Of a stretch of 64,000 nt of DNA, positions 21,219 to 58,820 are shown piece after piece. Position numbers and translations under genes: made by a program. The stretch is taken from positions 310,001-374,000 of the IMG/VR virus record IMGVR_UViG_3300037297_000066. One strand, written 5' to 3'. How positions within the stretch are numbered: the stretch's first letter is position 1; each line of letters starts with the position of its first letter. The notes below the pieces were generated by a model, which saw nothing but the letters and a program-made list of their open reading frames with translations, made no database searches and was not told where the DNA came from.

Positions 21219-22613
21219 ATGTGGGACGTTAAGTATCGTCCAAAGAAGTTCTCTGACGTGCTGGGCCAACCCGGCATCGTACAGGTGTTGAAGGCTAGGC
21301 TGAAGAACGGCACTGCTCTAGACACTTCGTACATTTTTTCCGGGGGTCATGGGATCGGCAAAACCACCCTGTCCAGGATTTTGGCCAGGGCTTTGCTTTG
21401 TCATGATCTTCAGCCTGAGGGAGAGCCCTGCAATCAGTGTGACAACTGTCGAGACATCTTGAGCGAGACCTCTCATGCGTTTCAGGAGCTGGATGCTGCC
21501 AGCTCGGGGACCATAGACAACGTACGTTCGATGGTCGAGTCTCTGCCCTTTGCTGTGCAAGGGGCTGCCAAGAGGATCATCCTCTTCGATGAGATGCATC
21601 GCATGTCTCGGGATAGCCAAGACGTGTTGCTGAAGCCTATCGAAGACAAGCGTTTGGTGGGCATCTTCTGCACTACTGAACCTACCAAGATCCGAGCTAC
21701 TATTCAGTCCAGGTGTGAGGAGTTCACGCTAAGGCCAATCACTCGGGAGGACATCCTGGCTCGAATGAAGAGGGTCTTAGAACAAGAGGGGGTCACCTAC
21801 GATGAAGACGCTGTGAACATCGTCATCGACTATTCAGGGGGACATGTACGGGATGTGCTCAACCGGCTGGAGATGATGGGACAGCTTGGGGAGATCACCC
21901 AGGAGTCTGTTCGAGAGTATCTGAACCTGTCTGTGGTCTCGCTTTACTATGAGATCTTGTTGTCTCTGGGGGACCCTGCTGTCTCTTTGCGGTTAGTAGA
22001 TCAGGCTGTGGATCGAGTGGGGGCGGATCAGGTGACCTCTGGTTTGGCCGAAGCTGCTATGAGCTCCTATCGGCTGGCTCACAAGATGCATTCTGACTTC
22101 GTGTATGCCGATCGAAAACTGGCAGTGAAGGTTTACGAGGTCTACGGGGATGCTGTGGTTCAGTTAGCTAGGTATTTCCTGAGGGATCGTAAGGTAACGG
22201 CTCCAGGGTTGTTGTGTGATGTGGTCTTGTGTGCCGGAGGGGTCCCTTCTGCGGTAGCTGAGAGCACTTCTCAGGTGGTCGTGAACGCCCCTCAGAGCGC
22301 CCCTGTTTCGGTTTCTTTACCAGAGGCCCCTACTGCTCCTACTGCCTCCAATCCTGTTTCTGAGCCAACCTCAGCCGTTGCTGCTGTGTCTGGTTCTGAG
22401 ACCTTGAAACCAGAAAAAGTCCCTGCTCCTGCCACTAGAACGTTGACTAGTTTGGATCACAAGGCAATATCTCCTGACATGCCCCGAGGTAGTTGTCCTG
22501 AGGAGCCTTTGGTGATCCCCAAAGGGACCAGTGATCGTGCCAATGACCTTTTGACTCCGGCGGAATGGCGACAGGCTTTTCAGAAGCTCTACTTGAGTCA
22601 AAATCGTGGGTGA
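21219..22613 (+). CDS. dnaX: DNA polymerase III gamma/tau subunit
   Basis: KYRPKKFSDVLGQ, GGHGIGKTT, zinc module C..EPCNQCDNC, ELDAAS, FDEMH, TIQSRC, GGHVRD; Pro/Ala/Ser linker. Confidence 0.95.
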   Translation: MWDVKYRPKKFSDVLGQPGIVQVLKARLKNGTALDTSYIFSGGHGIGKTTLSRILARALLCHDLQPEGEPCNQCDNCRDILSETSHAFQELDAASSGTIDNVRSMVESLPFAVQGAAKRIILFDEMHRMSRDSQDVLLKPIEDKRLVGIFCTTEPTKIRATIQSRCEEFTLRPITREDILARMKRVLEQEGVTYDEDAVNIVIDYSGGHVRDVLNRLEMMGQLGEITQESVREYLNLSVVSLYYEILLSLGDPAVSLRLVDQAVDRVGADQVTSGLAEAAMSSYRLAHKMHSDFVYADRKLAVKVYEVYGDAVVQLARYFLRDRKVTAPGLLCDVVLCAGGVPSAVAESTSQVVVNAPQSAPVSVSLPEAPTAPTASNPVSEPTSAVAAVSGSETLKPEKVPAPATRTLTSLDHKAISPDMPRGSCPEEPLVIPKGTSDRANDLLTPAEWRQAFQKLYLSQNRG

Positions 22614-24423
22614 ATGGTTAGTTATAGAGCTGTCCTCTCGGTGTGAGGGGGAGGACCCTAGAGTCCTTCAGGAGGCTTTGACGCGCTTGGTCAAAACCTC
22701 TGAGGTGTTCGTTCCTGCGGCCGTCACAGAGATAGGGGACGATGTTGTCTACTCATATCTCTTGGAGGGGTATGCCTTCGTTCGTCGAGACAGCCCTGAT
22801 TCCACTTATTTGAGATTGGAGAACAGCCGTTACGTAGAGTCTGTTTTGACGGAGCCTCGGGGTTCAGGGGGGAGTCGTCGGTTGTCTACTGTATCAGAAG
22901 AGGACATAGACAGGTTTCGGCGACAGGTGAAGGCTATTTCAGATCAGGGGATCAGCGTTGGAGACACCGTCACAATCACCTCTGGTCCCTATCGGAATAT
23001 AGAGGCTACGGTAGTCGAGGACATCGCAGAAGAGGGGATGGTCCAGGTGCACGTGAAGCTGCGCTCCAAGCAGTCTCTGGTGACGTTGCCACGAGGCTTC
23101 TTGAGGGTAGTAAAGAGGGCCCCTCTTTCCCCGGTCTACAATCGGATGGCTTCCCTAAGGGCCTGGTCCACGATGGCTACGGCCCTCTTGGAGTGGGAGG
23201 AAGGCGATTGGAGCCAGGTCCAAGCGGCGTATGACCGGTACCATCGACTGCACCAGTGGTCCAACAAAGGGAGGCTTCTCTACTCCTTCCTAGGGTCCAA
23301 AGGAATTTTGGACCATTCTTATCGGGATTTGCAGCGGAGACTGCAACGTTTGTCTCGTGTAAAGGCAGCGGCTAGAAAGGCCAGTAGGATCTGTAATCTC
23401 ATAGCCTTTTCTAGGGGGTGGGCGGGACCCCGTGATTTGGAGTCTCTTCAGAACAAACTGATGGATTTGGCGTGGCTGGATGACGTGATGCGTCGAGTTC
23501 AGGAGCTCCATCGTAGCTACAATGTACTGAATCGTAGGTTAACCCATAGGAACGAGAAGCGTAAGATGGTTCAGAACGTGTTGATTGATGGGCACAACTT
23601 GGCTTTTCGGTGCATGTATGCCCCTGGAATGTCCAGGCTGTCTGATAGTCAGGGACGTCCTACGGGGCTTATTGTGGGGTTCCTTCGTAGCCTGGGGGCT
23701 CTTCGCAAGAAATACCCCACGGCCCGCTTTTGGGTTACTTGGGACGGCTCTTCGCAAAGGCGCAAGTCGTCATTTGCTGACTACAAGGCAAATCGTCCAG
23801 TTAGGGAGGCCGATGAGTCTGGGTTTGACCAAATGGCTTATGTACGCAAAGTTATTGTGTATTTAGGGGTGACTCAAGCCTTCAACCCAGAAGAAGAAGC
23901 GGATGACGTGATTGGGGCTTTGGTGAAGGGGGACTTGGTTTCCCAGAAGAACGTGATCTTTTCCTCCGACAAAGATCTCCTACAGTTGGTTACACACGAC
24001 ACTTTCCTGTTGATCCCGGCCATCGGAAGTAGAAAGGAAATTTTGTTCGAAGGTCCCGAAATCGTTGAAGAATATATGGGGGTTCCACCTGGAAAAATGG
24101 TGGAGTTTAGGGCTCTGTGTGGGGACCCTAGTGACAACATTCCTGGGGTGCCTAGAGTTCCAAAGAAGGTATTGCGAGCATTGATTCAGGCCCATGGTTC
24201 GGTGGATGGCATATACAAATCTGGATTGGCTGGTTTGACAAGAAATCAATATGATCGCTTGCGTTCCGCCGAACCTCAGGTGAGAATTAACCTAGAACTG
24301 ATGGCGTTAGTTGACGTCGAAGTCTCTCTCACGTATCCAGATGTAAACAGCAGTGTTGCTCAGCAGTTGATGGAGGAAGTGGGGATCAAACCCCAACCCA
24401 TCCTTAAAGCGTTTGGATTGTAG
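22606..24423 (+). CDS. Fusion of a NusG-family NGN+KOW domain, a helical linker and a 5'-3' exonuclease (PolA N-terminal/FEN-like)
   Basis: aa 1-170: WLVI, EVFVP, LLEGYAFV, VGDTVTITSGPY; from aa 321: VLIDGHNLAFR, WDG, YKANR, EEADDVIG, SSDKDLLQL, GDPSDNIPGVP. Confidence 0.85.
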   Translation: MGEWLVIELSSRCEGEDPRVLQEALTRLVKTSEVFVPAAVTEIGDDVVYSYLLEGYAFVRRDSPDSTYLRLENSRYVESVLTEPRGSGGSRRLSTVSEEDIDRFRRQVKAISDQGISVGDTVTITSGPYRNIEATVVEDIAEEGMVQVHVKLRSKQSLVTLPRGFLRVVKRAPLSPVYNRMASLRAWSTMATALLEWEEGDWSQVQAAYDRYHRLHQWSNKGRLLYSFLGSKGILDHSYRDLQRRLQRLSRVKAAARKASRICNLIAFSRGWAGPRDLESLQNKLMDLAWLDDVMRRVQELHRSYNVLNRRLTHRNEKRKMVQNVLIDGHNLAFRCMYAPGMSRLSDSQGRPTGLIVGFLRSLGALRKKYPTARFWVTWDGSSQRRKSSFADYKANRPVREADESGFDQMAYVRKVIVYLGVTQAFNPEEEADDVIGALVKGDLVSQKNVIFSSDKDLLQLVTHDTFLLIPAIGSRKEILFEGPEIVEEYMGVPPGKMVEFRALCGDPSDNIPGVPRVPKKVLRALIQAHGSVDGIYKSGLAGLTRNQYDRLRSAEPQVRINLELMALVDVEVSLTYPDVNSSVAQQLMEEVGIKPQPILKAFGL

Positions 24424-24432
24424 GAGTGTGAT

Positions 24433-25104
24433 ATGGCTGCTTCTGGGTATGTGATCCCTGTAAATCCTCACGAGCTTGCAAGTAGGGTTCCCACCCACGA
24501 TCCTTGGTACGACGAAGAGAATACGTTCGAAGACGATGACGAAGAGGAGGATGGTTTTTCTGAAGTCGATGAAGAGGAAATGGCTGCTTTGGTAGCCACC
24601 ATTGACTACGAGAGCCAGATAGCCCCTTTTTTGGATCGTATTCCCGAGCGTGAAGCAGACCTGATCTATCTCTACTTCATCCAACACAAACGACAAGCGG
24701 ATATAGCCACCATTTTTGGAGTGACACAGGCGGCTATCTCCTATCGATTGGACCGGGGTATCAAGCGAATCAAGTTCCTCTTGGACATCCCTCAAGTGAC
24801 GGAAGACGACCTTCGGGCTGACCTCCCTGAAGTGTTCCCGGACTCGATGGATATCGATATCTTGGTGGGTATGTGGAAGACAACCTGCCAATCGGAAGTA
24901 GCCTCTCAACTCCGGTTAACACAGGGCCGGGTGCGCCACCGGTTCTTCAAAGCTGTCCGGGTGTTGCAGGAGGCGGCCGAACAGAACGAGAGGTTAAAGC
25001 CTTACAGTCAGATTTTCTCGAAAATTTCAAGCAAGCGGTTCAACATTCTGAGGGAAGTTAAATTACCACAGTGGTCAAATCGGGGTGGTGACGAGTGCTT
25101 GTGA
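24433..25104 (+). CDS. Protein with two sigma70 region-4-like helix-turn-helix domains
   Basis: IPEREADLIYLYF...RQADIATIFGVTQAAISYRLDRG and CQSEVASQLRLTQGRVRHRFFKA; acidic N-terminus; no region 2 recognised. Confidence 0.75.
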   Translation: MAASGYVIPVNPHELASRVPTHDPWYDEENTFEDDDEEEDGFSEVDEEEMAALVATIDYESQIAPFLDRIPEREADLIYLYFIQHKRQADIATIFGVTQAAISYRLDRGIKRIKFLLDIPQVTEDDLRADLPEVFPDSMDIDILVGMWKTTCQSEVASQLRLTQGRVRHRFFKAVRVLQEAAEQNERLKPYSQIFSKISSKRFNILREVKLPQWSNRGGDECL

Positions 25105-25124
25105 GTTTCACTGGAGTTGCAGTA

Positions 25125-25172
25125 GGCCCGGAGGCTGGGGGGTGAAGGCCCCTAAGGCCGGGTTTTCTTTTA
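25125..25172 (+). terminator. Possible intrinsic terminator at the end of the replication module
   Basis: GC-rich CCCGG...GGGG...CCCC...CCGGG pairing followed by TTTTCTTTT. Confidence 0.4.
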
Positions 25173-25174
25173 TG
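25161..25174 (+). promoter_or_regulatory. Putative late-promoter motif GGTTTTCTTTTATG
   Basis: Near-identical to GGTTTCTTTTATG at 58735-58747; both are intergenic and upstream of virion genes. Confidence 0.5.
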
Positions 25175-25198
25175 TAGTCTCTTCCTCGGGAGAGACTA
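25175..25198 (+). promoter_or_regulatory. Hairpin covering the ribosome-binding site of the first virion gene
   Basis: TAGTCTCT (25175-25182) / AGAGACTA (25191-25198) perfect inverted repeat containing GGGAGAG; GTG start at 25201. Confidence 0.6.
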
Positions 25199-25200
25199 TC

Positions 25201-26106
25201 GTGACTCTAGCCGCCAATCTCCGAACTCAAAGTTACCAGTATGGGTACCAGGTTGCCGAAGGCCGGTGGGTCTGGACTACCCAGGTAGATGTGACTTTGG
25301 CGTCTCCCGTCTACCGAATCACGAACATCGTCTCTCCCTACGGAATCCTTCGAGACACGATCCCCATTCCGGGAGAGGTCATCACGGCGATGAGTGATTC
25401 CATTGCCGAGATCCAGCAGCAGTTCCCACCGACCATCTTGCTGGGGCCTCCTACGTCTCTCACCTTTACAGTGGACGAGGGCCGGGGTTTCAGCCCGTCC
25501 CAGAACGTGGTGTTGACCAACACTGGGGTTTACGGGTCGTTGCTGGGCACCACTCTTGTAGCTTCGGCTTCTTACATCCTGGTGGACCCCGAGACGGTGG
25601 GGAACCTGTCCTTCAATGAGTCTGGGGCCTTTGATGTGTCTGTGGACTCCACAGACTTGTTGGCGGCGTCCAGTCCTTACGTTGGTAGCGTCACGGTCCA
25701 GGATGTTCACGCCACCAACAGTCCCCAACTGTTGCCGGTGAATATCATCGTGCGACCCAAGGCTGTCATTGATCTGTCTGTGCCTTCATTGAGTTTCTCG
25801 GTAGTGAAGCCTCTCACGGGTGTGTTCCCGCCGATTCCCTCCCAGGACTTCACGATCGAGAACATTGGGCCTTCTGGTTCTGTGCTGGACTACCAGGTAC
25901 AGAGGGTTGGCACAGCTTCACATACTTGGTTGACCAGTTTCTCTCCTGTCAGCGGTACTCTTGGTTCTGCCGAGACTGATATTGTCACTGTCAACGTAGC
26001 TCCTGATTCCAACTTGACGGCGGGGGTCTACACGGAGACTTTGCGTGTGAGTGGGTACAGTTCCAACTCCTATGTGGATTTGGAAGTGACCTTGACCATC
26101 ACCTGA
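25201..26106 (+). CDS. Virion protein with two Ig-like (BACON-like) domains
   Basis: Repeated pattern SLTFTV...QNVVLTNTG / SLSFSV...QDFTIENIG, WLTSFSPVSGTL, NLTAGVYTETLRV. Confidence 0.7.
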   Translation: MTLAANLRTQSYQYGYQVAEGRWVWTTQVDVTLASPVYRITNIVSPYGILRDTIPIPGEVITAMSDSIAEIQQQFPPTILLGPPTSLTFTVDEGRGFSPSQNVVLTNTGVYGSLLGTTLVASASYILVDPETVGNLSFNESGAFDVSVDSTDLLAASSPYVGSVTVQDVHATNSPQLLPVNIIVRPKAVIDLSVPSLSFSVVKPLTGVFPPIPSQDFTIENIGPSGSVLDYQVQRVGTASHTWLTSFSPVSGTLGSAETDIVTVNVAPDSNLTAGVYTETLRVSGYSSNSYVDLEVTLTIT

Positions 26107-26113
26107 GGCGATC

Positions 26114-26398
26114 ATGAAAGATTTTGATTTAGGTTCTGTGCAGAGTAGCAATGCTGGTCTCGATGCTTTTTTCGAGAACGAGCCGCAGGTGGTATCTCCT
26201 GTAGGAGCCGTCAAGCCCAAGACCTCTAGCATGATGCGGGTGGGCTCTCTGCAGCAGCTTCAGCCCTTCCAGCGGGTGTCTGCCGAGACCTTGGTGAACA
26301 AGTCCACTCAGGATTTGTGGGCTCTCCGTAAAAGCCAGAATGGGGAGTTCTTCATCGAGCGTCTGTTCGATGAAAAGGGGGCCCCTCTCAAGGGTTAA
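26114..26398 (+). CDS. Hypothetical virion-module protein
   Basis: 94 aa; GAGG upstream. Confidence 0.7.
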   Translation: MKDFDLGSVQSSNAGLDAFFENEPQVVSPVGAVKPKTSSMMRVGSLQQLQPFQRVSAETLVNKSTQDLWALRKSQNGEFFIERLFDEKGAPLKG

Positions 26399-26402
26399 GG
26401 GT

Positions 26403-28193
26403 ATGAGCCGCAAGACTTCGAATCTGTCCGACATTGCCCAAAGGGTGCGGTGTCGATACTTGTTGGCTGCTCAAGGGCTGGAAGGGGCTGACTTGAGCTC
26501 CACAAAAGGTTCAACCGATTCAGAAGGAACGGTCAGAACGGCATCTTTCCCCTTTCAGAAGCAGGATGGCCCTTCCGGCTCTCCTGCGGGCAACCAGAAG
26601 AGGGATATCCCCAAGGACCACCCCTTCGACCCCCGATCTCTAAAGCCTCTCAGCAAGGCTTTATGGGCCTCTAGTGTGGGTCTTGGGCACGCACTCACGG
26701 CCTACCGGTATCTGTCACGTCTCAAGAGTGCCACGATCAGTCCGGACGGCCTGTTGGGAGGGCGGGGGTACGTGATGCCCGTGTCCGAGATGCGCCGGAA
26801 GCTCTACGAGGCATGTGAAGCCCTGAGCAACCTCTCGGATACGCTGTATGACGAGATTTCCGCCCCGCACTGGAAGCCCCGTTTGGCTCAACTCGACGAG
26901 AATACGGCTGAGGATGTGGAGCGCTTCGTCGAAGAGTCTCAGCAAGTGCTGGATAACCCTGAAGAGGGTGCTGAGGACAAGATCAAGGAGATCGAGGAGG
27001 AAAACGACGGTAACTCTGAGACTTCTAAGGAAAAGTCTTCTCAGTTGCCGGAAGCGGGGCAGGACTCGTCGCTTTCTGCTGAAATGGCTCCGCAGGAGAA
27101 GGAGGCCCGCCTTCGAGGGGTCCCAAAGCTCGTTGCCTATCTGGATGACCATCAAGGGTTTTCCAAGAAGGGCGCTCTGGTCACCATGGAGCAGCTTTTG
27201 GCGTGGAGCGAGGATGATTCTGTACCTCGTGTAGACAACAGGGATCCTGGTGAGGGACAAGGGCCTTTCGGTTCCTTCAACAAAGACGAGCCTCTTGTTT
27301 CTGACGAGTGGGGGCAGCAACAGGGAGGGCGGTTCGATGATGACTATGACTACCCTTCTGAGTGGGAAAATGACCTGCGGATGGCAGGGATGCTGGTCTA
27401 TCTCAATGACGGCACTCCTGTAGACCCTACGGATCTTCCTTCTGGTGTGCCCTCCAACTCTGTGCCTTTGACTGAAGTTCAGGAGCGTCTTGGTCAATTG
27501 GCCGGTGTGGTAGAGGTGCAAGCTTCTGAAGGACCTAGCACCCTGGCCGAGATCAAAGAACAGTTTGGGGTGGATGTTAGCCCTATCAGGTTTTCTCAGT
27601 CGGTGATGCCGGAAGACTCTACGCCTACTGAAGCTTGGGACTATGGGTTGGGGTATGGTGCCCGCGGACAAGGCGTCTTGGAGATGGAAGTTCCGGGACC
27701 TCAATCCGAGCTCCCTTCGTCTGCAGCGCCTGAATGGGGTTCTGGGGGGGATGCCGTAGATGTGTCTCTGAATGAGCGTCGTGGGCAAGGTCGTGGGCAA
27801 GGGGGTTACGGTCGTGGACAAGGTCCTGGAAGGGGCCAAGGACCTGGCTGTACAGAGGAAGGGCCAGGTCAAGGTCAAGGTGTTGGTCAGGGACAACGCC
27901 AGCGTATGCGTAAACGGGATCCCTCCAACTGCCCTCGTCTTGAATCCACCTTACCAGGAGACGGTCAGCCTCCTGTTGCCCGATCGGACTACTATTATGG
28001 TCCTGGCGGGGGTCCTACTCTGTCAGAGTCAGGGCTGCCTTCAGAAGCAACTCCGGTAGAGGACTTCGATACCGGGCTTCTCGATACATCGTATAAGTCG
28101 GAAGATGTAGAAACCCCTTACGTGCGTTTCGAAGACTCCTTCAGTGGGTACCGAGACGATCCGTTCCACGACTGGCCGCAAAAGGATGCGTGA
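26403..28193 (+). CDS. Large acidic low-complexity head-associated protein with GQG repeats
   Basis: ATG 26403; helical core (aa ~70-200), acidic linkers, GRGQGRGQG... tract near 27779-27900. Confidence 0.75.
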   Translation: MSRKTSNLSDIAQRVRCRYLLAAQGLEGADLSSTKGSTDSEGTVRTASFPFQKQDGPSGSPAGNQKRDIPKDHPFDPRSLKPLSKALWASSVGLGHALTAYRYLSRLKSATISPDGLLGGRGYVMPVSEMRRKLYEACEALSNLSDTLYDEISAPHWKPRLAQLDENTAEDVERFVEESQQVLDNPEEGAEDKIKEIEEENDGNSETSKEKSSQLPEAGQDSSLSAEMAPQEKEARLRGVPKLVAYLDDHQGFSKKGALVTMEQLLAWSEDDSVPRVDNRDPGEGQGPFGSFNKDEPLVSDEWGQQQGGRFDDDYDYPSEWENDLRMAGMLVYLNDGTPVDPTDLPSGVPSNSVPLTEVQERLGQLAGVVEVQASEGPSTLAEIKEQFGVDVSPIRFSQSVMPEDSTPTEAWDYGLGYGARGQGVLEMEVPGPQSELPSSAAPEWGSGGDAVDVSLNERRGQGRGQGGYGRGQGPGRGQGPGCTEEGPGQGQGVGQGQRQRMRKRDPSNCPRLESTLPGDGQPPVARSDYYYGPGGGPTLSESGLPSEATPVEDFDTGLLDTSYKSEDVETPYVRFEDSFSGYRDDPFHDWPQKDA

Positions 28194-29857
28194 TGTCTGA
28201 TCTAGGCGATATCAGCAAGTTCATCGAAGGTTCGGTGCCCAACCTGGATTGGTTGGAAGTCGATGATAGGGATTACCAAGCCCTGGATCGGTTGCCCAAA
28301 CAGAACTTGGACATTCTTCCCGACTTGGAGGAGGCATGGAGCCACGGGGACGCTCCTCTCCATGGCAATTTGGAGCCTAACACTGGAGAATCTTTGACCA
28401 TGCTCGATGTTGGTCGAAGGGGCCCCAAAATGGCCACTGTCAAGGAGATTGCCAGGGTTGCTGTGAAGGCTTTGAACGAGTCTTCCAGCGTGCCCGCCAT
28501 GGTTAAGCTGCTTGCTAGTGCGTTTGATCAGACCTCCCTGCAGGCAGCTCATCCTGTGCTTAAGCGGGTAGTGGCGTCGTTTCGTCAACACCAGAAGCAG
28601 GCGGCCACCAAAGCCCCGGGGGAGTTCTCAGGGCAGCGTCAGACGGTGGCCAAGAAGGAAGCTTCATCCAAGGAGCAGGTGCAGCAGGGCTTGGAGGCCG
28701 TGTCCAAAACGGCTGCCGACGAATCCAAGAAGCAGCAGTGGAAGGTTGCGGCTGAGAAGGCTGCTCCAGTTGTGGCTCTGCTCCGTCGGGAAATGCTCAA
28801 GGGGCGTTCGGCCTCGGACATTCTGAAGGCTCTGAAGATGTCTTTTGATGTCCGAGATCTGCAGGCTACTCGGGAGCATTGGGAGCCTCTGTTCCGTAAG
28901 GTAGGGCTTTACGGGGTGGTATACTCTAGTCAGGATTCGTTCCCAACCTGTCCTGAGGGAGCAGACTTCTTGGCCAAGCACGCTTCCTCGGTGAAGGGAA
29001 TTGTAGCTGGCGACAAGTGCGGCTCTTGCATCTTCAGCCAGGTCGGTCGCTGCATGATGTATGGCCGCCGACTAGTGGCTAAGGAGGGAGATCTCATCAC
29101 AGCAGAGATGGTTCAGGCTTTGTTGGACGAGCATAAGCTCTCTGGTCGTCTGCCCCACGACTTCCAACCTACCGGGGAGACGTTGGAAGAGAATCTGAAG
29201 GCTATTCATGAGGCGGCCATGTCTCCCAAGCCTTCTGCTGCACTCAATCTTCGGAGTACCGTCGAGCGGGCTTTCACAGGAGCCACCCGTCAGCACAAGA
29301 CGAGTTCTATGACCGTCAGGGAAGTGGTGAAGACAGCTTGTCAGTACATGAACGAAGGTTTGTATGGCCGAGAACTGTTGGCCGTGCTCAAGTCTCGATT
29401 CGAAGAGCGAGACATTCAGGCATCCGTTCCCGAACTGAAGCAGGTCTTGGCAGAACAAGGGTTGCAGGGCTACAAGTTCGTCGATCCTACGGTCTACGAC
29501 GACTATGGTAAAGGCTGCAAAGTTGCTGCTCGAAAGTTCCGTACCAAGACGGCGGTGCAGTATCTCAAGGTGGGTAGCAAGTGCAATTCTTGTGTCCATC
29601 AAACTAGTCCGGGCTTCTGTTCTGTCATCCACAAGCAGCTCGTGGTGGAGCCCCCATACGTAGACAAGGCGGCAGAGCAGAAAGCCATCTTGAGTTCTGG
29701 ATCTGCTATAGATGTTCCCCTTGGCAACCTGGTCAACAGTGGGTTGAGCATGTTGCAAGAGTACCAACTGCAACAGTCCGGAGACGTTGATCTGAACCCC
29801 GAAGCTCCTTCGATGGAGGTGTCCGTAGAGTTGGGTACGTCCGAAGTGAAGCTCTAG
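28190..29857 (+). CDS. Protein with a duplicated Cys4 domain
   Basis: Two copies of a helical + G(L)Y/QG + C-x21/22-C-x2-C-x7/8-C unit and a partial third copy at the N-terminus. Confidence 0.8.
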   Translation: MMSDLGDISKFIEGSVPNLDWLEVDDRDYQALDRLPKQNLDILPDLEEAWSHGDAPLHGNLEPNTGESLTMLDVGRRGPKMATVKEIARVAVKALNESSSVPAMVKLLASAFDQTSLQAAHPVLKRVVASFRQHQKQAATKAPGEFSGQRQTVAKKEASSKEQVQQGLEAVSKTAADESKKQQWKVAAEKAAPVVALLRREMLKGRSASDILKALKMSFDVRDLQATREHWEPLFRKVGLYGVVYSSQDSFPTCPEGADFLAKHASSVKGIVAGDKCGSCIFSQVGRCMMYGRRLVAKEGDLITAEMVQALLDEHKLSGRLPHDFQPTGETLEENLKAIHEAAMSPKPSAALNLRSTVERAFTGATRQHKTSSMTVREVVKTACQYMNEGLYGRELLAVLKSRFEERDIQASVPELKQVLAEQGLQGYKFVDPTVYDDYGKGCKVAARKFRTKTAVQYLKVGSKCNSCVHQTSPGFCSVIHKQLVVEPPYVDKAAEQKAILSSGSAIDVPLGNLVNSGLSMLQEYQLQQSGDVDLNPEAPSMEVSVELGTSEVKL

Positions 29858-29870
29858 AAAGAGAGCTAGT

Positions 29871-30440
29871 ATGTCTGACGAGAAAACTGAGAAACCTGGG
29901 GCCCAGATTGTGCCCATCCACTCAGCCACAGCCACTGAGAGGCCAACCGTAAAGCGGGGCAAAGGACGTCCGAAGAAGGTAGTCCTCAAGCCTTCTCGAG
30001 AGGACCTAGAGTACCATGCTGAGATGGCTCAGGAGCGTGAGAGGTTTGTGGATCTCGACGCTGTGGTACAGGACTGTAAGGATGGAAAGGACACTCTAGA
30101 GCGTCTTCGAAGCCTTCAGTTGCAGATGGCCCGGGAAGCGGCGGCTTTGCAGTTCACTCGGCTGGAACAAGAGAAGTACGGCAAAGAAACGGCTCAGATT
30201 TCTACTCGACGTCTCAACGCCCTCAAGCTCGTTGCGGACATCGAGTTGGAGATCAAGAAGTTGGGGACCAATGTTCTGGACTTGCATAGTGAGAAAGTCC
30301 AGAAGCTCTTCCAGTTGTGGATCGAGTTCATCAAGGAAGCTGCCTCTCCTCTTCCTCCCGAACAGTCCGATCTGTTCTTCAATCGGCTGGAGAATCTGAT
30401 GAGCGACTGGGAGGAAAAGGCATCTGAGGTTCTCCGGTAA
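29871..30440 (+). CDS. Probable terminase small subunit (positional)
   Basis: Helical 189-aa protein immediately upstream of TerL; KRGKGRPKK basic motif. Confidence 0.5.
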   Translation: MSDEKTEKPGAQIVPIHSATATERPTVKRGKGRPKKVVLKPSREDLEYHAEMAQERERFVDLDAVVQDCKDGKDTLERLRSLQLQMAREAAALQFTRLEQEKYGKETAQISTRRLNALKLVADIELEIKKLGTNVLDLHSEKVQKLFQLWIEFIKEAASPLPPEQSDLFFNRLENLMSDWEEKASEVLR

Positions 30441-30448
30441 GGAGTACT

Positions 30449-32449
30449 TTGGCTTCTCCCAGCAACAAAGGCGTAGCCTCTATGATTCGCCAGGCGAATC
30501 GAGAGGTGAAACGCAATCAGAAGGATGTTGTTCAGACCGAGAGAGACGGTCGTAGCCGCACCTTCAGTGTTCTGGACTACATCGAACAGCCCTGGGGCCT
30601 CAACATGAGGTTGTTTCCAGCGCAAAGGTTCTTGGTCAAGCTCTACTACAACATCCCTTTGGACACAGCGCTGCCTGAGCGTCCTGAGTCTCGTATTCAG
30701 ATCCCGGACATGTTTGCTACTCGGATCCTCTACGAGTTCAGCGAGCGTCAGTATTTGAGCTACCTGTTTAATGAGGGGCGCTGCAACGTCGGGAAACAAG
30801 ACCTAGAGCATGATCGTAGGGAGTTGATCCTTGCCATCGGTAGAAGGGCGGGAAAGACAACTTTATCAGGTATTTTCGCTAGTTACGAGGTTTACCGGCT
30901 GCTCAATCTCTACAACCCTCAGGAGTACTACGGGCTTCCCAACGGCAATCGAATCCAGATCATCTCGGTAGCTACGGACAAGGATCAGGCGGGGCTGCTC
31001 TACAACGAGGTGAGCACACACTTGGCCAAGTGCGAGTACTTCAAACCCTACATGAGCAACTTCACTCAGTCTAGGGTGGACTTCCGGACGCCTTATGACA
31101 TCGAGAAGTTTGGGGTCAACACCTGGCACGAAAACGGTCGCTTCGTTTCTCAGCAAGGCAAAGCCACGCTTCGGGTGACCTTCAAGAGCTGTATCGCCAA
31201 GGGTCTCAGAGGCTCTGGAAACGTGGTTGTGATCTTGGATGAGATCGCCCACTTCCAGGACAAAGGCAACAGCTCGGCGAAAGAGATCTACGATGCAGTG
31301 ACTCCTTCGACCGCTGCCTTTTCCCGAAAGGATCCGGAGACGGGGCTACCTGCAGTGGACCCTGAATCGGGAGACAAGGCTCCTGTTGAGGCTAGGGTTA
31401 TCCTCATCTCCTCTCCGTTGGGTAGGTCAGGGAAGTTCTTTGAGCTGTTCGATCTAGCCATGCACGGGGGTGAAGGCTCTGAGAACCTGTTGGCGATTCA
31501 AGCTCCCACTTGGGAGATCAACCCAACAATCCCGACCTCCTACTACAAGGAGAAGTATCACGCTGACCCTCAGGTTTTCTCGGTCGAGCACGGAGCTCAG
31601 TTCTCGGATCAAACCAAGGGTTGGATCGAGCGTGAGGGGGATATCCAAGACTGTATTCGTTCAGAGCTTCGTCCCCAGCAGCAAGCTCGTCCCAAGATGC
31701 CTCACCAGATGGGCATTGACGTTGGATTGGTAGGGGACGGAACGGGTATCGTCATCACGCACATAGAAGACGACAAAGTCGTGTTGGACTACCACGAGGT
31801 TTGGTATGCGGGGGTGGATTGGCGAGAAAGCAACCCCCATTTAGGCAACCTTTACCCTACCGACTATGCAAAGGTCCTTGGGGATCTTGAGCGTTTGGAC
31901 TTCGATGAGATCGCCAACTGGATAGTGGCTTTGTCCAAACGCTTCCACATTGTGCAGGGGTTGTTTGACCGTTGGAATGGTATCCCTCTTGAGCAGACTC
32001 TCCACAAGCGGGGCTTCAAGCAGTTCAAGGCTGAGTTCTTCACTCGGGACACGACCAGCAAGATCTACCAGACGGCCAAGATGTTGATGTTGGATGAGCG
32101 CCTGGTACTCTATGACTGGCCGATACCAGAGCAGGGGGCTGTAAAGCACTCAGGGCTCATAGCGGAGCTTCTGGCTTTGCAGGCTCGGCAGATTTCCAAG
32201 AATTTGGTGTTGGTGGAGGCCCCTGTGAAACGGGGCGCCCATGACGACCTGAGTGACGCCTTTGTACGCAGTGTTTGGCTATCTGTGGAGCAAATGCTCA
32301 ATCAGAAGCATACGGCCCACGGGGGAGTCTACCGTCCCCATGTGGCCAGTAGCATGACTTCCCAGCGGTATCAGGCTATGCGGATGAGAAAGCATGGAGT
32401 TCCAAGCAGGATGCCTGGCAGGGTTCGGCAGCGCTTTGGGGTTAGGTAG
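30449..32449 (+). CDS. terL: Terminase large subunit
   Basis: IGRRAGKTT Walker A, VVILDEIAHF Walker B, ISSP coupling motif, nuclease MGIDVG...DGTG, HDDLSDAFV. Confidence 0.92.
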   Translation: MASPSNKGVASMIRQANREVKRNQKDVVQTERDGRSRTFSVLDYIEQPWGLNMRLFPAQRFLVKLYYNIPLDTALPERPESRIQIPDMFATRILYEFSERQYLSYLFNEGRCNVGKQDLEHDRRELILAIGRRAGKTTLSGIFASYEVYRLLNLYNPQEYYGLPNGNRIQIISVATDKDQAGLLYNEVSTHLAKCEYFKPYMSNFTQSRVDFRTPYDIEKFGVNTWHENGRFVSQQGKATLRVTFKSCIAKGLRGSGNVVVILDEIAHFQDKGNSSAKEIYDAVTPSTAAFSRKDPETGLPAVDPESGDKAPVEARVILISSPLGRSGKFFELFDLAMHGGEGSENLLAIQAPTWEINPTIPTSYYKEKYHADPQVFSVEHGAQFSDQTKGWIEREGDIQDCIRSELRPQQQARPKMPHQMGIDVGLVGDGTGIVITHIEDDKVVLDYHEVWYAGVDWRESNPHLGNLYPTDYAKVLGDLERLDFDEIANWIVALSKRFHIVQGLFDRWNGIPLEQTLHKRGFKQFKAEFFTRDTTSKIYQTAKMLMLDERLVLYDWPIPEQGAVKHSGLIAELLALQARQISKNLVLVEAPVKRGAHDDLSDAFVRSVWLSVEQMLNQKHTAHGGVYRPHVASSMTSQRYQAMRMRKHGVPSRMPGRVRQRFGVR

Positions 32450-32726: not shown

Positions 32727-33203
32727 ATGCCTGAACTGACTGCTAAACAAGAGGCTTTGCTCCAAGAGGAGTTACAGCGTATTGAGGCTGAACGATCCAG
32801 AGCGGCTGAGGCAGCTCGGCATCAAGGGAAGTCGGTAGAAGACGTGATCTTCCAGATTCAGGCAACTCGGGGAGAGCTGGAAGAGAAGGCCGCTCGTTTG
32901 CAAGAGTTGGCAACTCGGCTTCGTTCGGAAATCCGCAATGCGGCTGACTTGGAAGGCATTCGTCACTACACAACGTTCAACAACGCCCACCTTCGATTGG
33001 CTGGGGCTGTCTTTCAGGCAGTACGCCGAACAGTGTCAACGGACCGGCTTTTGACAGCAGCCAAAGCAGACCAGGAAGACGCTCAACGACGGGATGCTAG
33101 GGAGCGTCAGTATCAGGAGGCCCGGGTTCGTCAAAAGGCTGTAGAGCGTCTTCAGATTCCTCAGGAAGACGACTTTGAATCTATCTACGGAGAGCTAGTC
33201 TGA
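32727..33203 (+). CDS. Coiled-coil hypothetical protein
   Basis: 158 aa, helical; stop overlaps the portal ATG. Confidence 0.7.
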   Translation: MPELTAKQEALLQEELQRIEAERSRAAEAARHQGKSVEDVIFQIQATRGELEEKAARLQELATRLRSEIRNAADLEGIRHYTTFNNAHLRLAGAVFQAVRRTVSTDRLLTAAKADQEDAQRRDARERQYQEARVRQKAVERLQIPQEDDFESIYGELV

Positions 33204-46570: not shown

Positions 46571-46613
46571 GCGGTTTCTATTTGTGGGCGGCCTAATCTG
46601 AATAGGTTGCCTC

Positions 46614-58685: not shown

Positions 58686-58710
58686 AAAGCCTCTCTCAGA
58701 AGGGCTTTTT
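58686..58710 (+). terminator. Intrinsic terminator
   Basis: AAAGCC...GGCTTT hairpin with a TTTTT tail. Confidence 0.6.
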
Positions 58711-58734
58711 GGGTTCGAGTGGAGGGGGCGCTGA

Positions 58735-58747
58735 GGTTTCTTTTATG
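58735..58747 (+). promoter_or_regulatory. Putative late-promoter motif GGTTTCTTTTATG
   Basis: Matches 25161-25174; lies just after a terminator. Confidence 0.5.
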
Positions 58748-58820
58748 GCCTGTCAGGGTCGTATAGGTAGTTTTCCGCCAGCCAGACAGCGGAAGTCCCC
58801 AGAATCAGGAGTTCAGGCTG

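What the first reader, a model, noticed from the sequence alone, without database searches (positions are those of the whole stretch)
24433..25104. Stand-alone tandem sigma-region-4 protein with no region 2, at the early/late junction
Seen: two sigma70 r4-like HTHs in tandem after an acidic N-terminus, with no recognisable region 2. It is the last gene before a terminator-like element and the first virion gene. Established: split or partial sigma systems exist (Bacillus SigO-RsoA, T4 gp55/gp33, AsiA/MotA appropriation). Inference: this could be a phage late activator that binds the beta-flap and/or a repeated DNA site, or half of a split sigma. It may work together with the NusG-exonuclease encoded directly upstream.
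Basis: partly seen in the sequence, partly recalled or inferred. Interest (0 to 1): 0.62.

Follow-up and report, generated by a model that had tools for sequence, protein, structure and literature searches.

The report
Tandem sigma-4 factor of huge phages
A 223-residue protein of a 437-kb phage consists of two copies of the promoter-binding, polymerase-docking end of a bacterial sigma factor and lacks the DNA-melting part; it is a strongly conserved gene that always follows a NusG-like gene and precedes a conserved late-promoter-like motif, so it most likely helps turn host RNA polymerase onto the packaging and virion genes, though nothing has been tested at the bench.

Summary
Window 24433-25104 (+) encodes a 223-aa protein with a conserved N-terminal peptide, an acidic disordered linker, two sigma-70 region-4-type HTH domains (residues 55-121 and 122-200) and a conserved C-terminal tail. 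It has no region 2. The window lies in a complete 437-kb phage genome with terminal repeats. The protein has more than 700 relatives, essentially all on huge-phage contigs, at 55-69% identity although synonymous sites are saturated. The gene order clamp loader, NusG-like (here fused to a 5'-3' exonuclease), tandem sigma-4, then the block that holds terminase and portal is kept in all ~80 related loci. In a distant 485-kb phage the NusG-like gene is stand-alone but still adjacent. About 60 nt after the stop codon lies a conserved motif, GGTTTTCTTTTATG, at a fixed 38-42 nt before the next gene and with no -35 element. It is rare in the genome and stays with the downstream gene when mobile DNA is inserted. 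The most likely role is a sigma-4-derived late-transcription factor acting on host RNA polymerase at this promoter class. This resembles the LtrA/RinA late activators or T4 gp33. A sigma-2-only candidate partner exists 62 kb away, but the evidence for it is weak. The mechanism is inferred. I rate it a new variant of a known kind.

The parts
24433..25104 (+). Gene for the 223-aa tandem sigma-4 protein (P0001)
   Evidence: ORF. Pfam Sigma70_r4 E 7.4e-13 with two stretches. More than 736 homologs of 205-290 aa. Single copy in the 437-kb genome.
24433..24492 (+). Conserved N-terminal peptide (res 1-20, GYVIPVDPxELAxRF)
   Evidence: G5, Y6, V7, I8, P9, P12 and R18 are invariant in 40 homologs. Modelled at low confidence. 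Function unknown; possibly a docking peptide (inference).
24502..24588 (+). Acidic, variable, disordered linker (res ~24-52)
   Evidence: 18 D/E against 1 K/R in res 1-54. pLDDT below 50 for res 27-45. Variable in length and sequence between homologs. TIGR02937 aligns res 29-114 to model positions 79-162, that is the sigma linker plus region 4.
24595..24795 (+). Sigma region-4 domain 1 (res 55-121; regions 4.1 and 4.2, recognition helix TQAAISYRLDRG)
   Evidence: Pfam res 67-114. VIA Z 8.0-8.4 to SigR, SigL, BldN and SigW region 4. Family profile against PDB sequences: SigF region 4 E 3.1e-7, FliA 9.5e-5. The recognition helix is invariant even in the 37-45% identity clade.
24796..25032 (+). 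Sigma-4/LuxR-type HTH domain 2 (res 122-200; recognition helix LTQGRVRHRFF). Some orthologs carry a CxxC...CxxC insertion before it.
   Evidence: Pfam second stretch. RpoS region 4 6fi7 Z 7.0 with 72 aligned; sigH 3mzy Z 6.8. hhalign to domain 1 gives Prob 94%. Insertions seen.
25033..25101 (+). Conserved C-terminal tail (res 201-223, FNILREVKLPQWxxRGGD)
   Evidence: F203, N204, V209, P212, Q213, R217 and G218 are invariant or nearly so. Low pLDDT. Codon usage shows selection at the amino-acid level only.
22606..24423 (+). Upstream partner gene: NusG-like (NGN+KOW, res ~1-165) fused to a 5'-3' exonuclease/FEN (res ~319-582)
   Evidence: NCBIfam NusG TIGR00922 E 2.5e-6 over res 4-161, below its cut-off. 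LoaP and UpxY models hit more weakly. Pol I 5'-3' exonuclease E 1e-48. Pfam 5_3_exonuc_N E 2.3e-30 and KOW E 0.0023. PHROG 6386 'transcription antiterminator' E 6.6e-9. Directly upstream of the tandem sigma-4 gene in nearly all ~80 loci. Stand-alone NusG-like gene in LR745208.1.
21219..22613 (+). Clamp-loader-like AAA+ gene, a conserved third member of the gene string
   Evidence: DNA_pol3_delta2 E 4.4e-25. Same position in relatives and in LR745208.1, where it carries an intein.
25124..25165 (+). Hairpin after the stop codon (terminator-like stem). Its T-tail overlaps the motif.
   Evidence: Fold; consensus scan. Many relatives also have a hairpin here, but those with 46-51-nt spacers do not.
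25160..25174 (+). Conserved late-promoter-like motif GGGTTTTCTTTTATG, 38 nt from motif core to the GTG at 25201, with no conserved -35
   Evidence: The exact 10-mer occurs 2 times on + and 0 on - in 437 kb, against 0.15 expected. It is the top PWM site at 22.1 bits. A core motif is present in 43 of 62 unique orthologous upstream 70-mers against 1.1 in shuffles; the pattern was defined post hoc. The spacing is fixed. The motif stays next to the downstream gene when 1-2.6 kb is inserted after the sigma-4 gene.
25174..25200 (+). 5'-leader hairpin between the motif and the start codon; in relatives it embeds the GAGGA Shine-Dalgarno
   Evidence: Fold. Hairpins with different sequences sit at the same place in relatives.
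25201..26106 (+). First gene of the downstream block (301 aa, function unknown)
   Evidence: Sub-threshold Ig-like hit. Conserved at 50-61% identity in the same position.
46572..46586 (+). Second, weaker motif copy GGTTTCTATTTGTGG, 40 nt before the ATG at 46614
   Evidence: PWM 13.5 bits, intergenic, followed by a hairpin.
58735..58748 (+). Third motif copy GGTTTCTTTTATGG, after a terminator-like hairpin (58687-58711) and before the gene at 58821
   Evidence: PWM 19.3 bits; second exact 10-mer.

Best explanation
P0001 is a sigma-derived late-transcription factor of a clade of huge phages. It is made as the last, probably translationally coupled, gene of the replication-gene string, right after a NusG-like protein. 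It acts on host RNA polymerase at a small set of -35-less phage promoters, the first of which lies about 60 nt after its own stop codon and heads the block that holds terminase, portal and protease.

It has two sigma region-4 domains and no region 2, so it cannot open a promoter itself. It must work with a sigma-2-bearing factor, either a host sigma or a phage one.

The proposed mechanism is that domain 1, a canonical region 4.1/4.2 unit, takes the sigma-4 position on the beta-flap tip. The second, more basic HTH and the conserved end peptides then contact upstream DNA or a partner such as the NusG-like protein. This would redirect polymerase from -35-dependent host promoters to the phage late motif.

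Shown here: the architecture, strong purifying selection, conserved gene order, the conserved motif and its tie to the downstream gene. Inferred: binding to RNAP, binding to DNA, activation, and timing.
For: Architecture: two sigma-4-type domains and no sigma-2. Domain 1 carries the region 4.1 signature (IPEREADLI) and an ECF-like 4.2 helix, as seen directly in the alignment.

Selection: 55-69% identity across loci whose synonymous sites are saturated (normalised codon entropy 0.83-0.93). Both recognition helices are invariant even at 37-45% overall identity. The protein is better conserved than its neighbours, which share 44-61%, and far better than the phage's own ECF-like sigma, which shares 31-34% in the same genomes. 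This fits a conserved partner such as RNAP.

Position: the end of the replication string, directly before the conserved motif and the terminase/portal block, in ~80 loci. This is the same layout as the experimentally proven Ltr late activators, one family of which (LtrA) is sigma-4-like (PMC3753634).

Motif: rare, strand-specific, at fixed spacing, without a -35, conserved at saturating divergence, and travelling with the downstream gene.

Host polymerase: no RNAP beta-subunit hit in the genome, while several sigma-like genes are present. This fits a phage that reprogrammes host RNAP.

NusG link: adjacency is kept whether or not NusG is fused to FEN. Complex prediction of the NusG-like N-domain with P0001 gave ipSAE 0.41 (runs 0.47, 0.41, 0.35) against a best control of 0.02. 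The tool calls this 'weak support'. That mark was reached by 58 of 80 solved complexes and 2 of 110 mismatched pairs, but at 0.60 or under by only 7 of those 80 solved complexes and by both mismatches that passed. The runs agree in at least 85% of contacts and the partner pLDDT is at least 69. My own alignments were used, so these counts hold only roughly.
Against: No binding or expression data exist; the RNA-read route was closed.

The motif varies between relatives (CTTTTAT, CTTCTTAT, ACTTGTA, ACTTATA) while both recognition helices stay invariant. The motif may therefore be read by another factor, for example the fast-evolving phage sigmas.

The protein is acidic overall (pI 4.67) and its HTH domains are near neutral. 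This differs from the small basic Ltr activators and from typical DNA-binding sigma-4 domains.

The motif could be an RNA-processing or other signal rather than a promoter. The late nature of the downstream block rests on terminase, portal and protease hits 5-15 kb away.

The complex score is in the range the tool calls more often wrong than right without a strong prior.
Confidence: 0.5

Rival explanations
1. It is half of a split sigma, or a T4-like gp55/gp33 pair. A phage sigma-2-only protein (the 386-aa product of genome 271310-272470) binds the beta' clamp helices and reads the -10-like motif. P0001 supplies the sigma-4 half on the beta-flap.
For: The motif is a single -10-region-like element without a -35, as at T4 late promoters (T4 late transcription reviewed in PMC2988020, found; structure paper PMC7892883).

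The 386-aa family has conserved blocks that resemble regions 2.1-2.2 and 2.3-2.4, and only a short C-terminal helix pair; one member ends before any recognition helix. It gives weak Sigma70_r2/TIGR02937 hits, E 0.002-0.02. Residues 156-272 of its model match sigma-2 domains and T4 gp55 (8x6g_H Z 6.3 with 80 aligned; 7d7d_F Z 6.2 with 89 aligned).

9 of the 11 IMG/VR contigs found with this family also carry the P0001 ortholog.

P0001 is acidic. That gp33 is acidic is my own recollection and was not checked; PMC7892883 describes a negatively charged patch on gp33.
Against: The candidate partner lies 62 kb away and is not co-transcribed. Its model is poor (pLDDT 48), Z ~6 is in the range common for helical domains, and its profile finds no sigma among PDB sequences.

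It evolves fast, with only two word-search hits. It was not found by single-sequence search in the two most distant genomes that still have P0001.

It sits next to a complete ECF-like sigma, so it may belong to another stage of infection.

P0001 shows no similarity to gp33 in any library.
Confidence: 0.15
2. It is an elongation, antitermination or host shut-off factor that works with the NusG-like protein. A sigma-4 mimic stays on or blocks the beta-flap tip. This would displace host sigma region 4 and NusA/hairpin action so that very long late operons are read through, in the manner of P23-45 gp39 or lambdoid Q.
For: The pairing with a NusG-like gene is conserved across distant clades, and the complex prediction gave weak support: ipSAE 0.41 against a best control of 0.02. 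That mark was reached by 58 of 80 solved complexes and 2 of 110 mismatched pairs, but at 0.60 or under by only 7 of those 80 and by both mismatches that passed. The runs agree in at least 85% of contacts, the partner pLDDT is at least 69, and my own alignments were used, so the counts hold only roughly.

Only about 3-5 motif sites head a co-directional block of roughly 130 kb, so processivity factors would be useful.

gp39 binds RNAP, inhibits initiation and antiterminates (abstract of PMC3351154). That its binding site is the beta-flap is my own knowledge.

The gene lies just before a late promoter. That lambda Q occupies the same kind of position is my own knowledge.
Against: There is no similarity to gp39, Q or p7. 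Sigma-4 domains normally leave the flap on promoter escape (established knowledge). The invariant basic recognition helix of domain 2 suggests nucleic-acid contact rather than a pure flap blocker. Nothing was tested.
Confidence: 0.15
3. It is an ordinary sequence-specific DNA-binding protein with two HTHs that does not touch RNAP as a sigma-4 does. Options are a repressor or activator of KorA or LuxR type, or a DNA-recognition subunit for packaging or replication such as a small terminase.
For: KorA gives a sub-threshold hit: E 2.6e-4, 21.6 bits against a cut-off of 26.7. LuxR-type and G20C small-terminase HTH matches to domain 2 reach Z 5.4-6.7. Two HTHs in one chain can read a bipartite site as a monomer, as in MarA/SoxS (own knowledge).
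Against: Domain 1 matches sigma region 4 best in every library. The protein is acidic and has no recognisable oligomerisation domain. Five ORFs separate it from the large terminase, and a 189-aa ORF sits directly before that gene. No repeated operator-like sites were seen beyond the single motif.
Confidence: 0.12

Closest known systems
LtrA (Sigma70_r4) family of the Ltr super-family of phage late activators (RinA, ArpU, LtrA, LtrB/DUF1492, LtrC); Quiles-Puchalt et al. 2013, PMC3753634
   Same: It is a stand-alone protein whose only recognisable part is sigma region 4. [quoted passage not shown] Few late promoters drive a very long late operon.
   Different: Ltr proteins are small and basic, carry a single HTH unit, come from temperate phages of Gram-positive bacteria, and bind a DNA repeat upstream of terS. 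P0001 is 223 aa and acidic (pI 4.67), has two sigma-4 units plus conserved end peptides, and is tied to a NusG-like gene. tblastn against 50,697 phage records found no relative other than one uncultured huge phage. An Atlas cluster with DUF1492 plus Sigma70_r4 matches its shape only weakly (TM 0.41).
T4 late transcription: gp55 (sigma-2-like), gp33 (beta-flap binder), gp45 clamp (PMC7892883, PMC2988020)
   Same: The late promoter is a single short -10-region element without a -35. The factor is divided into a sigma-2-like and a flap-side protein. The genes are linked to the replication machinery; here the clamp loader and FEN are the immediate neighbours.
   Different: gp33 has no sequence-specific HTH and no detectable similarity to P0001. 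P0001 has bona fide sigma-4 sequence signatures, twice. No clamp gene was found with the DnaN model. No clamp-binding motif is recognisable in its tail. The sigma-2-like candidate is only weakly supported.
Minimal single-HTH sigma factors of group 2 jumbo phages (Iyer et al. 2021, PMC7824862)
   Same: It is a phage-encoded sigma-family protein reduced to the HTH that binds promoter DNA and the beta-flap (SBHM) domain, in phages without their own RNAP.
   Different: Those are described as having a single HTH domain. P0001 has a duplicated unit, conserved end peptides and a fixed NusG-like neighbour, none of which that survey describes.
P23-45 gp39 and lambdoid Q: factors that switch promoter use or antiterminate late genes (PMC3351154, PMC9388147)
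   Same: They are possible analogues in function. Each is a small phage protein acting on host RNAP that favours -35-less phage promoters and/or read-through of long late operons. That gp39 acts at the beta-flap, and that the Q gene lies just before the late promoter, are my own knowledge.
   Different: The folds are unrelated and there is no sequence similarity. The resemblance is in layout and logic only.
SigO-RsoA two-subunit sigma of Bacillus (own knowledge, not checked here)
   Same: Sigma functions are divided between two polypeptides.
   Different: As I recall, the two Bacillus genes are adjacent and co-transcribed. Here the adjacent gene is NusG-FEN, and the sigma-2-like candidate lies 62 kb away.
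MarA/SoxS/Rob: monomeric activators with two HTHs (own knowledge; SoxS structures PMC9638938)
   Same: Two HTH units in one chain could read one compact site as a monomer and touch RNAP.
   Different: These belong to the AraC-type HTH family, not sigma-4. No homology was detected.

Membership tests
Sigma-70 family sigma factor | Region 2 domain (binds beta' clamp helices, recognises and melts the -10) | tested here: not met
   No Sigma70_r2 hit in P0001, and residues 1-60 give no Pfam hit. The N-terminus is disordered and acidic in the model. No sigma-2 match appears in the fold searches.
Sigma-70 family sigma factor | Region 4 domain (4.1 + 4.2 HTH) | tested here: met
   Pfam E 7.4e-13, above the cut-off. 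TIGR02937 48.6 bits against a cut-off of 42.9, covering model positions 79-162 only. VIA Z ~8 to many region-4 structures. The unit is present twice.
Sigma-70 family sigma factor | Binds core RNAP and confers promoter-specific initiation | not testable with these tools
   Needs biochemistry.
Ltr super-family, LtrA (Sigma70_r4) late activators | [quoted passage not shown] | tested here: met
   Domain content. Position. The promoter-like motif lies 60 nt downstream. Family definition from PMC3753634.
Ltr super-family, LtrA (Sigma70_r4) late activators | Small basic protein | tested here: not met
   223 aa, pI 4.67; residues 55-223 have pI 7.98.
Ltr super-family, LtrA (Sigma70_r4) late activators | Sequence relatedness to known members (phages of Gram-positive bacteria) | tested here: not met
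   tblastn of P0001 against 50,697 GenBank phage records at E <= 1e-3 found only LR745208.1, an uncultured 485-kb phage.
Ltr super-family, LtrA (Sigma70_r4) late activators | Binds the DNA repeat upstream of terS and is sufficient to activate the late promoter | not testable with these tools
   Needs EMSA and reporter assays. No repeat was seen; only a single motif.
T4 gp33 late co-activator | Sequence or profile similarity to gp33 | tested here: not met
   All PHROG, Pfam and NCBIfam hits are sigma-factor or HTH families. No gp33 chain is among the 50 best structural matches, though a family that is not listed is not excluded.
T4 gp33 late co-activator | [quoted passage not shown] | not testable with these tools
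   A conserved C-terminal tail exists, but no clamp gene was found with TIGR00663, and no test of binding was possible.
Two-subunit sigma (SigO-RsoA type) | Sigma-2-bearing partner encoded next to the sigma-4-bearing subunit and co-transcribed with it | tested here: not met
   The neighbours are NusG-FEN and a 301-aa gene of unknown function. The only sigma-2-like candidate without a sigma-4 lies at genome 271310-272470, 62 kb upstream.
Small terminase subunit | Gene adjacent to the large terminase; oligomerisation domain after the N-terminal HTH | tested here: not met
   Five ORFs (25201-30440) lie between P0001 and the large terminase gene at 30449. The model shows two HTH domains and no further domain. 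The only link is Z 5.4 to the G20C TerS HTH.
KorA/TrfB repressors | Match to the family model above its threshold | tested here: not met
   PF16509 scores 21.6 bits against a cut-off of 26.7, over the same HTH as Sigma70_r4.
NusG/RfaH family (for the upstream partner's N-terminal part) | NGN domain followed by KOW | tested here: inconclusive
   TIGR00922 E 2.5e-6 over res 4-161, covering model positions 1-164 of 172, but 27.5 bits against a cut-off of 135.7. LoaP and UpxY models hit at E 3-4e-4. KOW E 0.0023 and NusG E 0.046. PHROG antiterminator E 6.6e-9. NGN-like and KOW-like motifs are conserved in 38 sequences. The domain was not folded.

The most novel reading that the evidence does not exclude
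The NusG-like protein and the tandem sigma-4 protein together form a composite factor for host RNAP built from parts not known to be combined. The NGN domain would take the beta' clamp-helix site that sigma-2 (or gp55) normally uses. The two sigma-4 units would take the beta-flap and upstream DNA. In this clade the fused flap endonuclease would tie the complex to replication intermediates or clamps. Late transcription would then be licensed by replication, as in T4, but with unrelated proteins, and the same complex would carry over into elongation as an antiterminator for the ~130-kb co-directional late region.
Probability: 0.08. Interest if true: 0.9.

Novelty: new variant of a known kind. 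Interest (0 to 1): 0.55.

Why it matters
Huge phages of 400-550 kb have no cultured model for this clade, and how they time gene expression is unknown. This gene, its NusG-like neighbour and the short conserved motif give a concrete, testable late-switch module: one protein, one partner and one 14-nt element that can all be synthesised and tested with purified RNA polymerase.

If the sigma-4-only protein docks on the beta-flap, it would add a third, independently evolved version of the flap-side late factor, beside T4 gp33 and the Ltr activators. It would also show that sigma region 4 can be duplicated and used without region 2.

The NusG-exonuclease fusion next to it hints at a physical link between replication and transcription. 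The motif is also useful in practice for annotating late operons in this large metagenomic phage group.

Tried and rejected
2. BLASTP between the two domains found nothing. Only profile-profile comparison showed the relation.
3. A strict IUPAC pattern, GTTTYYTYTTAT, searched in five genomes gave 0-1 hits each. It was too strict because the T-run length varies, so it is uninformative.
4. Covariation between motif variants and residues of the recognition helices: the helices are invariant, and the one variable position (K/G173) follows phylogeny rather than motif type. Inconclusive.
5. A hidden DNA element in the conserved 3' end of the gene: rejected, because synonymous sites are as saturated there as elsewhere.
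6. The 386-aa sigma-2-like candidate: the word search found only 2 relatives. The AF2 model from 5 sequences is poor (pLDDT 48). The profile against PDB sequences found no sigma. Only the trimmed fold search points to sigma-2 and gp55, at Z ~6. It remains a candidate, not a finding.
7. The weak Sigma70_r4 hit at genome 208164 (E 0.1) lies in no convincing ORF and was dropped.
8. Host clue from genomes: three hits in MAGs labelled Parcubacteria, Methylobacter and Lentisphaeria. These are most likely mis-binned phage contigs, so no host was inferred.
9. A phage RNAP beta subunit (PF00562) and a DnaN clamp (TIGR00663) were not found. Divergent versions are not excluded.
10. Whole-protein structural analogues: none in PDB (best Foldseek E 0.03), in BFVD (E 0.03 or worse) or in the Atlas, apart from its own family.
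11. The antisense ORF 24307-24909 (200 aa) is taken as spurious, since the + strand frame is the conserved one.
12. The large representative-protein search was not used, because the word search and the family scans had already settled the family. No alternative genetic code was needed.
Full report
WHERE THE WINDOW LIES. The window is bases 310001-374000 (+) of a single 437,331-bp virus record with direct terminal repeats, rated complete. Almost every long ORF in the window is on the + strand. A crude ORF map of the whole genome shows one co-directional block from about 303 kb to 435 kb. Upstream of the finding lie replication genes: a phage metallopeptidase, a clamp-loader-like AAA+ protein (DNA_pol3_delta2, E 4.4e-25), and a 605-aa fusion of a NusG-like N-terminus with a 5'-3' exonuclease. 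Downstream lie terminase large subunit (30449-32449; PHROG E 5.8e-20), portal (33203-35029; E 1.2e-20) and a protease-like gene (39021-40514). No RNAP beta-subunit signature is found in the genome, but several sigma-like ORFs are. The phage therefore probably reprogrammes host RNA polymerase.

THE OBSERVATION. The ORF at 24433-25104 is real. An AGGAG overlaps the stop codon of the upstream gene, 6 nt before the ATG.
- Pfam Sigma70_r4 scores E 7.4e-13 with two stretches. The second stretch is weak on its own, at E 6e-4 to 2e-3.
- An AF2 model built on 40 homologs (pLDDT 77, pTM 0.62) has a low-confidence N-terminus, with pLDDT below 50 for residues 27-45.
- Residues 55-121 form a four-helix domain that matches sigma region 4 structures (SigR 5fgm Z 8.4, rmsd 2.1, 65 aligned, and many others at Z ~8).
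- Residues 122-200 form a second domain that matches RpoS region 4 (6fi7, Z 7.0, 72 aligned), a Fusobacterium sigma-H (Z 6.8) and LuxR-type effector domains.
- The two HTH units are related at the profile level (hhalign Prob 94%, E 1.2e-7).
- Residues 1-54 hold 18 acidic and 1 basic residue. Nothing resembling region 2 is found by family scans or by fold.

Its one unproven element is calling the next gene a virion gene. That gene has no assignable family.

THE FAMILY. The word search returned 736 proteins at E <= 0.001. The 120 listed are 205-290 aa long, 50-86% identical, and many come from contigs of 300-550 kb. The Atlas places the nearest clusters almost wholly in viruses. Only its own family shares the two-domain shape (TM 0.53), and neither PDB nor BFVD holds a whole-protein analogue.

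Alignments show five conserved parts:
- an N-terminal peptide, GYVIPVDPxELAxRF;
- a variable acidic linker;
- domain 1, with a textbook region 4.1 signature (IPEREADLI) and an ECF-like 4.2 helix (TQAAISYRLDRG);
- domain 2, with a basic helix (LTQGRVRHRFF), preceded in some members by a CxxC...CxxC insertion;
- a C-terminal tail, FNILREVKLPQWxxRGGD.

Both recognition helices are invariant even in the clade that is only 37-45% identical overall. Codon analysis shows synonymous sites near saturation along the whole gene (normalised entropy 0.83-0.93). The conservation is therefore strong selection on the protein, not recent common descent and not an overlapping DNA element.

GENE CONTEXT. The order is metallopeptidase, clamp loader, NusG-FEN, tandem sigma-4, a 301-aa gene, a 94-aa gene, two large genes, and then terminase. 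This order holds in two contigs found through the protein database. It also holds in essentially all of the ~80 IMG/VR loci, including those at 37-45% identity. P0001 is among the best conserved genes of the string.

In the only GenBank phage record with a relative (LR745208.1, 485 kb, 46% identity), the string reads clamp loader (with an intein), a stand-alone 207-aa NusG-like protein with a KOW motif, then the tandem sigma-4 gene overlapping its stop by 16 nt. The NusG-like/sigma-4 pairing is thus older than the exonuclease fusion. The NusG assignment rests on TIGR00922 at E 2.5e-6 over nearly the full model but far below its cut-off, weaker LoaP and UpxY hits, a PHROG antiterminator family, and conserved NGN-like and KOW-like motifs.

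A complex prediction of the NusG-like N-domain with P0001 gave ipSAE 0.41 (three runs: 0.47, 0.41, 0.35) against a best control of 0.02. The tool calls this weak support. The mark was reached by 58 of 80 solved complexes and 2 of 110 mismatched pairs, but at 0.60 or under by only 7 of those 80 and by both mismatches that passed. The runs agree in at least 85% of contacts and the partner pLDDT is at least 69. My own alignments were used, so the counts hold only roughly. I treat this as a modest upward nudge, not as evidence of binding.

THE BOUNDARY AFTER THE GENE. The 96-nt spacer holds three elements:
- a hairpin at 25124-25165;
- the sequence GGGTTTTCTTTTATG at 25160-25174;
- a second hairpin running up to the GTG at 25201.

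Comparing the same spacer in relatives, which otherwise share no sequence there, shows the T-rich motif at a fixed 38-42 nt from motif start to start codon. Its variants are GGTTTTCTTTTATG, CGTTTCTTCTTATGG and GCTTTTACTTGTACGC, and GGGCTTCTTTTAGCC in the distant clade. A core pattern is present in 43 of 62 unique upstream 70-mers against 1.1 in shuffles. I defined that pattern after seeing the data, so the contrast is inflated, but it is large.

Three points argue that this is a signal for the downstream gene and not merely a terminator tail:
- Relatives with spacers of only 46-51 nt keep the motif but have no hairpin before it.
- Where 1-2.6 kb of extra DNA is inserted after the sigma-4 gene, the motif stays about 40 nt before the downstream gene.
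- No conserved -35-like sequence lies upstream of it.

In the whole 437-kb genome the exact 10-mer occurs twice, both times on the + strand and in intergenic DNA, against 0.15 expected. A weight-matrix scan ranks 335158 (window 25158), 368731 (window 58731) and 356570 (window 46570) as the best + strand intergenic sites, with two weaker candidates near 21 and 38 kb. The site at 58735 follows a terminator-like hairpin, and the one at 46572 is again 40 nt before a start codon. The picture is a handful of -35-less promoters, each heading a very long operon. Whether they really are promoters is not shown.

OTHER SIGMA-LIKE GENES. At 271-274 kb the genome has two. One is a 261-aa ECF-like protein covering positions 14-162 of TIGR02937 (E 7e-8 in the genome scan, below the cut-off), so it has both regions 2 and 4. 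The other is a 386-aa protein with a weak region-2 hit.

Relatives of the 386-aa protein share blocks that resemble regions 2.1-2.2 and 2.3-2.4, separated by a variable insertion, and end in only a short helix pair. Its low-confidence model matches sigma-2 domains and T4 gp55 at Z ~6 over residues 156-272, but its profile finds no sigma among PDB sequences. It is a candidate sigma-2-only factor.

Both genes evolve much faster than P0001: 31-34% identity for the ECF-like protein, against 55-61% for P0001 in the same genomes. All five related genomes examined carry several sigma-like ORFs. Of the 11 IMG/VR contigs found with the 386-aa family, 9 also carry P0001.

WHAT IT MOST LIKELY DOES. A protein with two sigma-4 units and no sigma-2 cannot be a sigma factor by itself. 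In the established picture, region 2 binds the beta' clamp helices and handles the -10, and region 4 binds the beta-flap tip helix and the -35 (summarised in PMC7892883).

The layout matches a known, experimentally proven kind. [quoted passage not shown] They are the only phage factor needed for the late operon, and one of their four families (LtrA) is recognisable only as Sigma70_r4 (PMC3753634). It also recalls T4, where a -35-less late promoter is served by a sigma-2-like gp55 and a flap-binding gp33 (PMC7892883).

My best reading (0.5) is a sigma-4-derived late-transcription factor that acts on host RNAP at the motif-bearing promoters. Flap docking by domain 1, with DNA or partner contact by domain 2 and the end peptides, is the most likely mechanism. 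Several points favour an RNAP-directed role over a plain DNA-binding role:
- the canonical 4.1/4.2 signature;
- the extreme conservation relative to the neighbours;
- the acidity of the protein;
- the NusG-like partner;
- the recognition helices not changing when the motif does.

The last point also means the motif itself may be read by another factor.

The rivals are the split-sigma or gp55/gp33-like pair (0.15), an elongation or shut-off role together with the NusG-like protein (0.15), and an ordinary DNA-binding or packaging protein (0.12).

NOVELTY AND SCORE. Stand-alone sigma-4-like late factors are known (LtrA; the 'minimal sigma' noted in jumbo phages, PMC7824862). The category is therefore not new. 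The new features are:
- the duplicated sigma-4 architecture with conserved end peptides;
- its status as a highly conserved gene in a large clade of 300-550-kb phages;
- the fixed pairing with a NusG-like gene, fused to a flap endonuclease in this clade;
- the associated -35-less motif.

No paper found in the library describes this family. I rate it a new variant of a known kind, with interest 0.55. It gives a clean, testable module in an uncultured phage group, but every functional step is still inferred.

No alternative genetic code was invoked.

Noticed in passing
window 22606-24423 (+): A single 605-aa protein joins a NusG-like NGN+KOW module to a Pol I-type 5'-3' exonuclease/flap endonuclease through a ~150-aa linker of unknown fold. 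The fusion is present in ~80 related loci. In LR745208.1 the NusG-like part is a separate 207-aa gene. A transcription-elongation module fused to an Okazaki-fragment nuclease is unusual and might couple transcription to replication.
   Followed up: partly
window 25160-25174, 46572-46586, 58735-58748; also genome ~21205 and ~37816: A rare, strand-specific, -35-less motif (GGTTTYYTTTTATG-like) sits 38-42 nt before start codons. It is conserved in orthologous spacers of relatives at saturating divergence. It is a likely late-promoter class with only about 3-5 sites in 437 kb.
   Followed up: partly
window 25174-25200 and the same position in loci L015-L082: Between the motif and the start codon, nearly every relative has a hairpin of different sequence that embeds the GAGGA Shine-Dalgarno (for example GGCAGTTAGAGGACTGCC). 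This could be a 5'-end stabiliser or a translational control element. Covariation was not formally tested.
   Followed up: no
loci L016, L019, L025, L035, L036, L052, L056, L076, L082-L091, between the sigma-4 gene and the 301-aa gene: Insertions of 0.7-2.6 kb, apparently extra ORFs and possibly homing endonucleases, sit between the sigma-4 stop codon and the motif in many relatives. In L056 there is also an insertion between the exonuclease and the sigma-4 gene. This spacer is a hot spot for mobile DNA.
   Followed up: no
homologs P0009, P0015, P0037, P0046, P0048, P0066, P0072, P0077, P0079 and others; loci L015, L025, L041, L047: Some orthologs carry a 25-90-aa insertion with CxxC...CxxC, which looks like a zinc ribbon, exactly between the first helix and the rest of sigma-4 domain 2.
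   Followed up: no
genome G000:C1:271310-273686 (outside the window; loci L002, L007): A pair of fast-evolving sigma-like genes: a 386-aa protein with a sigma-2/gp55-like domain and no clear sigma-4, and a 261-aa ECF-like sigma. They are adjacent also in relatives G001 and G003.
   Followed up: partly
L013 5466-7352 (LR745208.1) and L010 18021-20645: Inteins interrupt core genes in relatives. The clamp loader of LR745208.1 shows PT-HINT/Intein_splicing hits. The terminase-region gene of a 549-kb contig shows Intein_splicing plus LAGLIDADG.
   Followed up: no
window 26340-28193 (+): The 617-aa protein two genes downstream has long low-complexity acidic and GRGQG-repeat stretches and no family hit. 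It is conserved in position but only in parts (30-66% over segments).
   Followed up: no
window 58687-58711: A clean terminator-like hairpin with a T-run lies immediately before the third motif copy. This suggests a terminator-promoter pair that divides the late region into operons.
   Followed up: no
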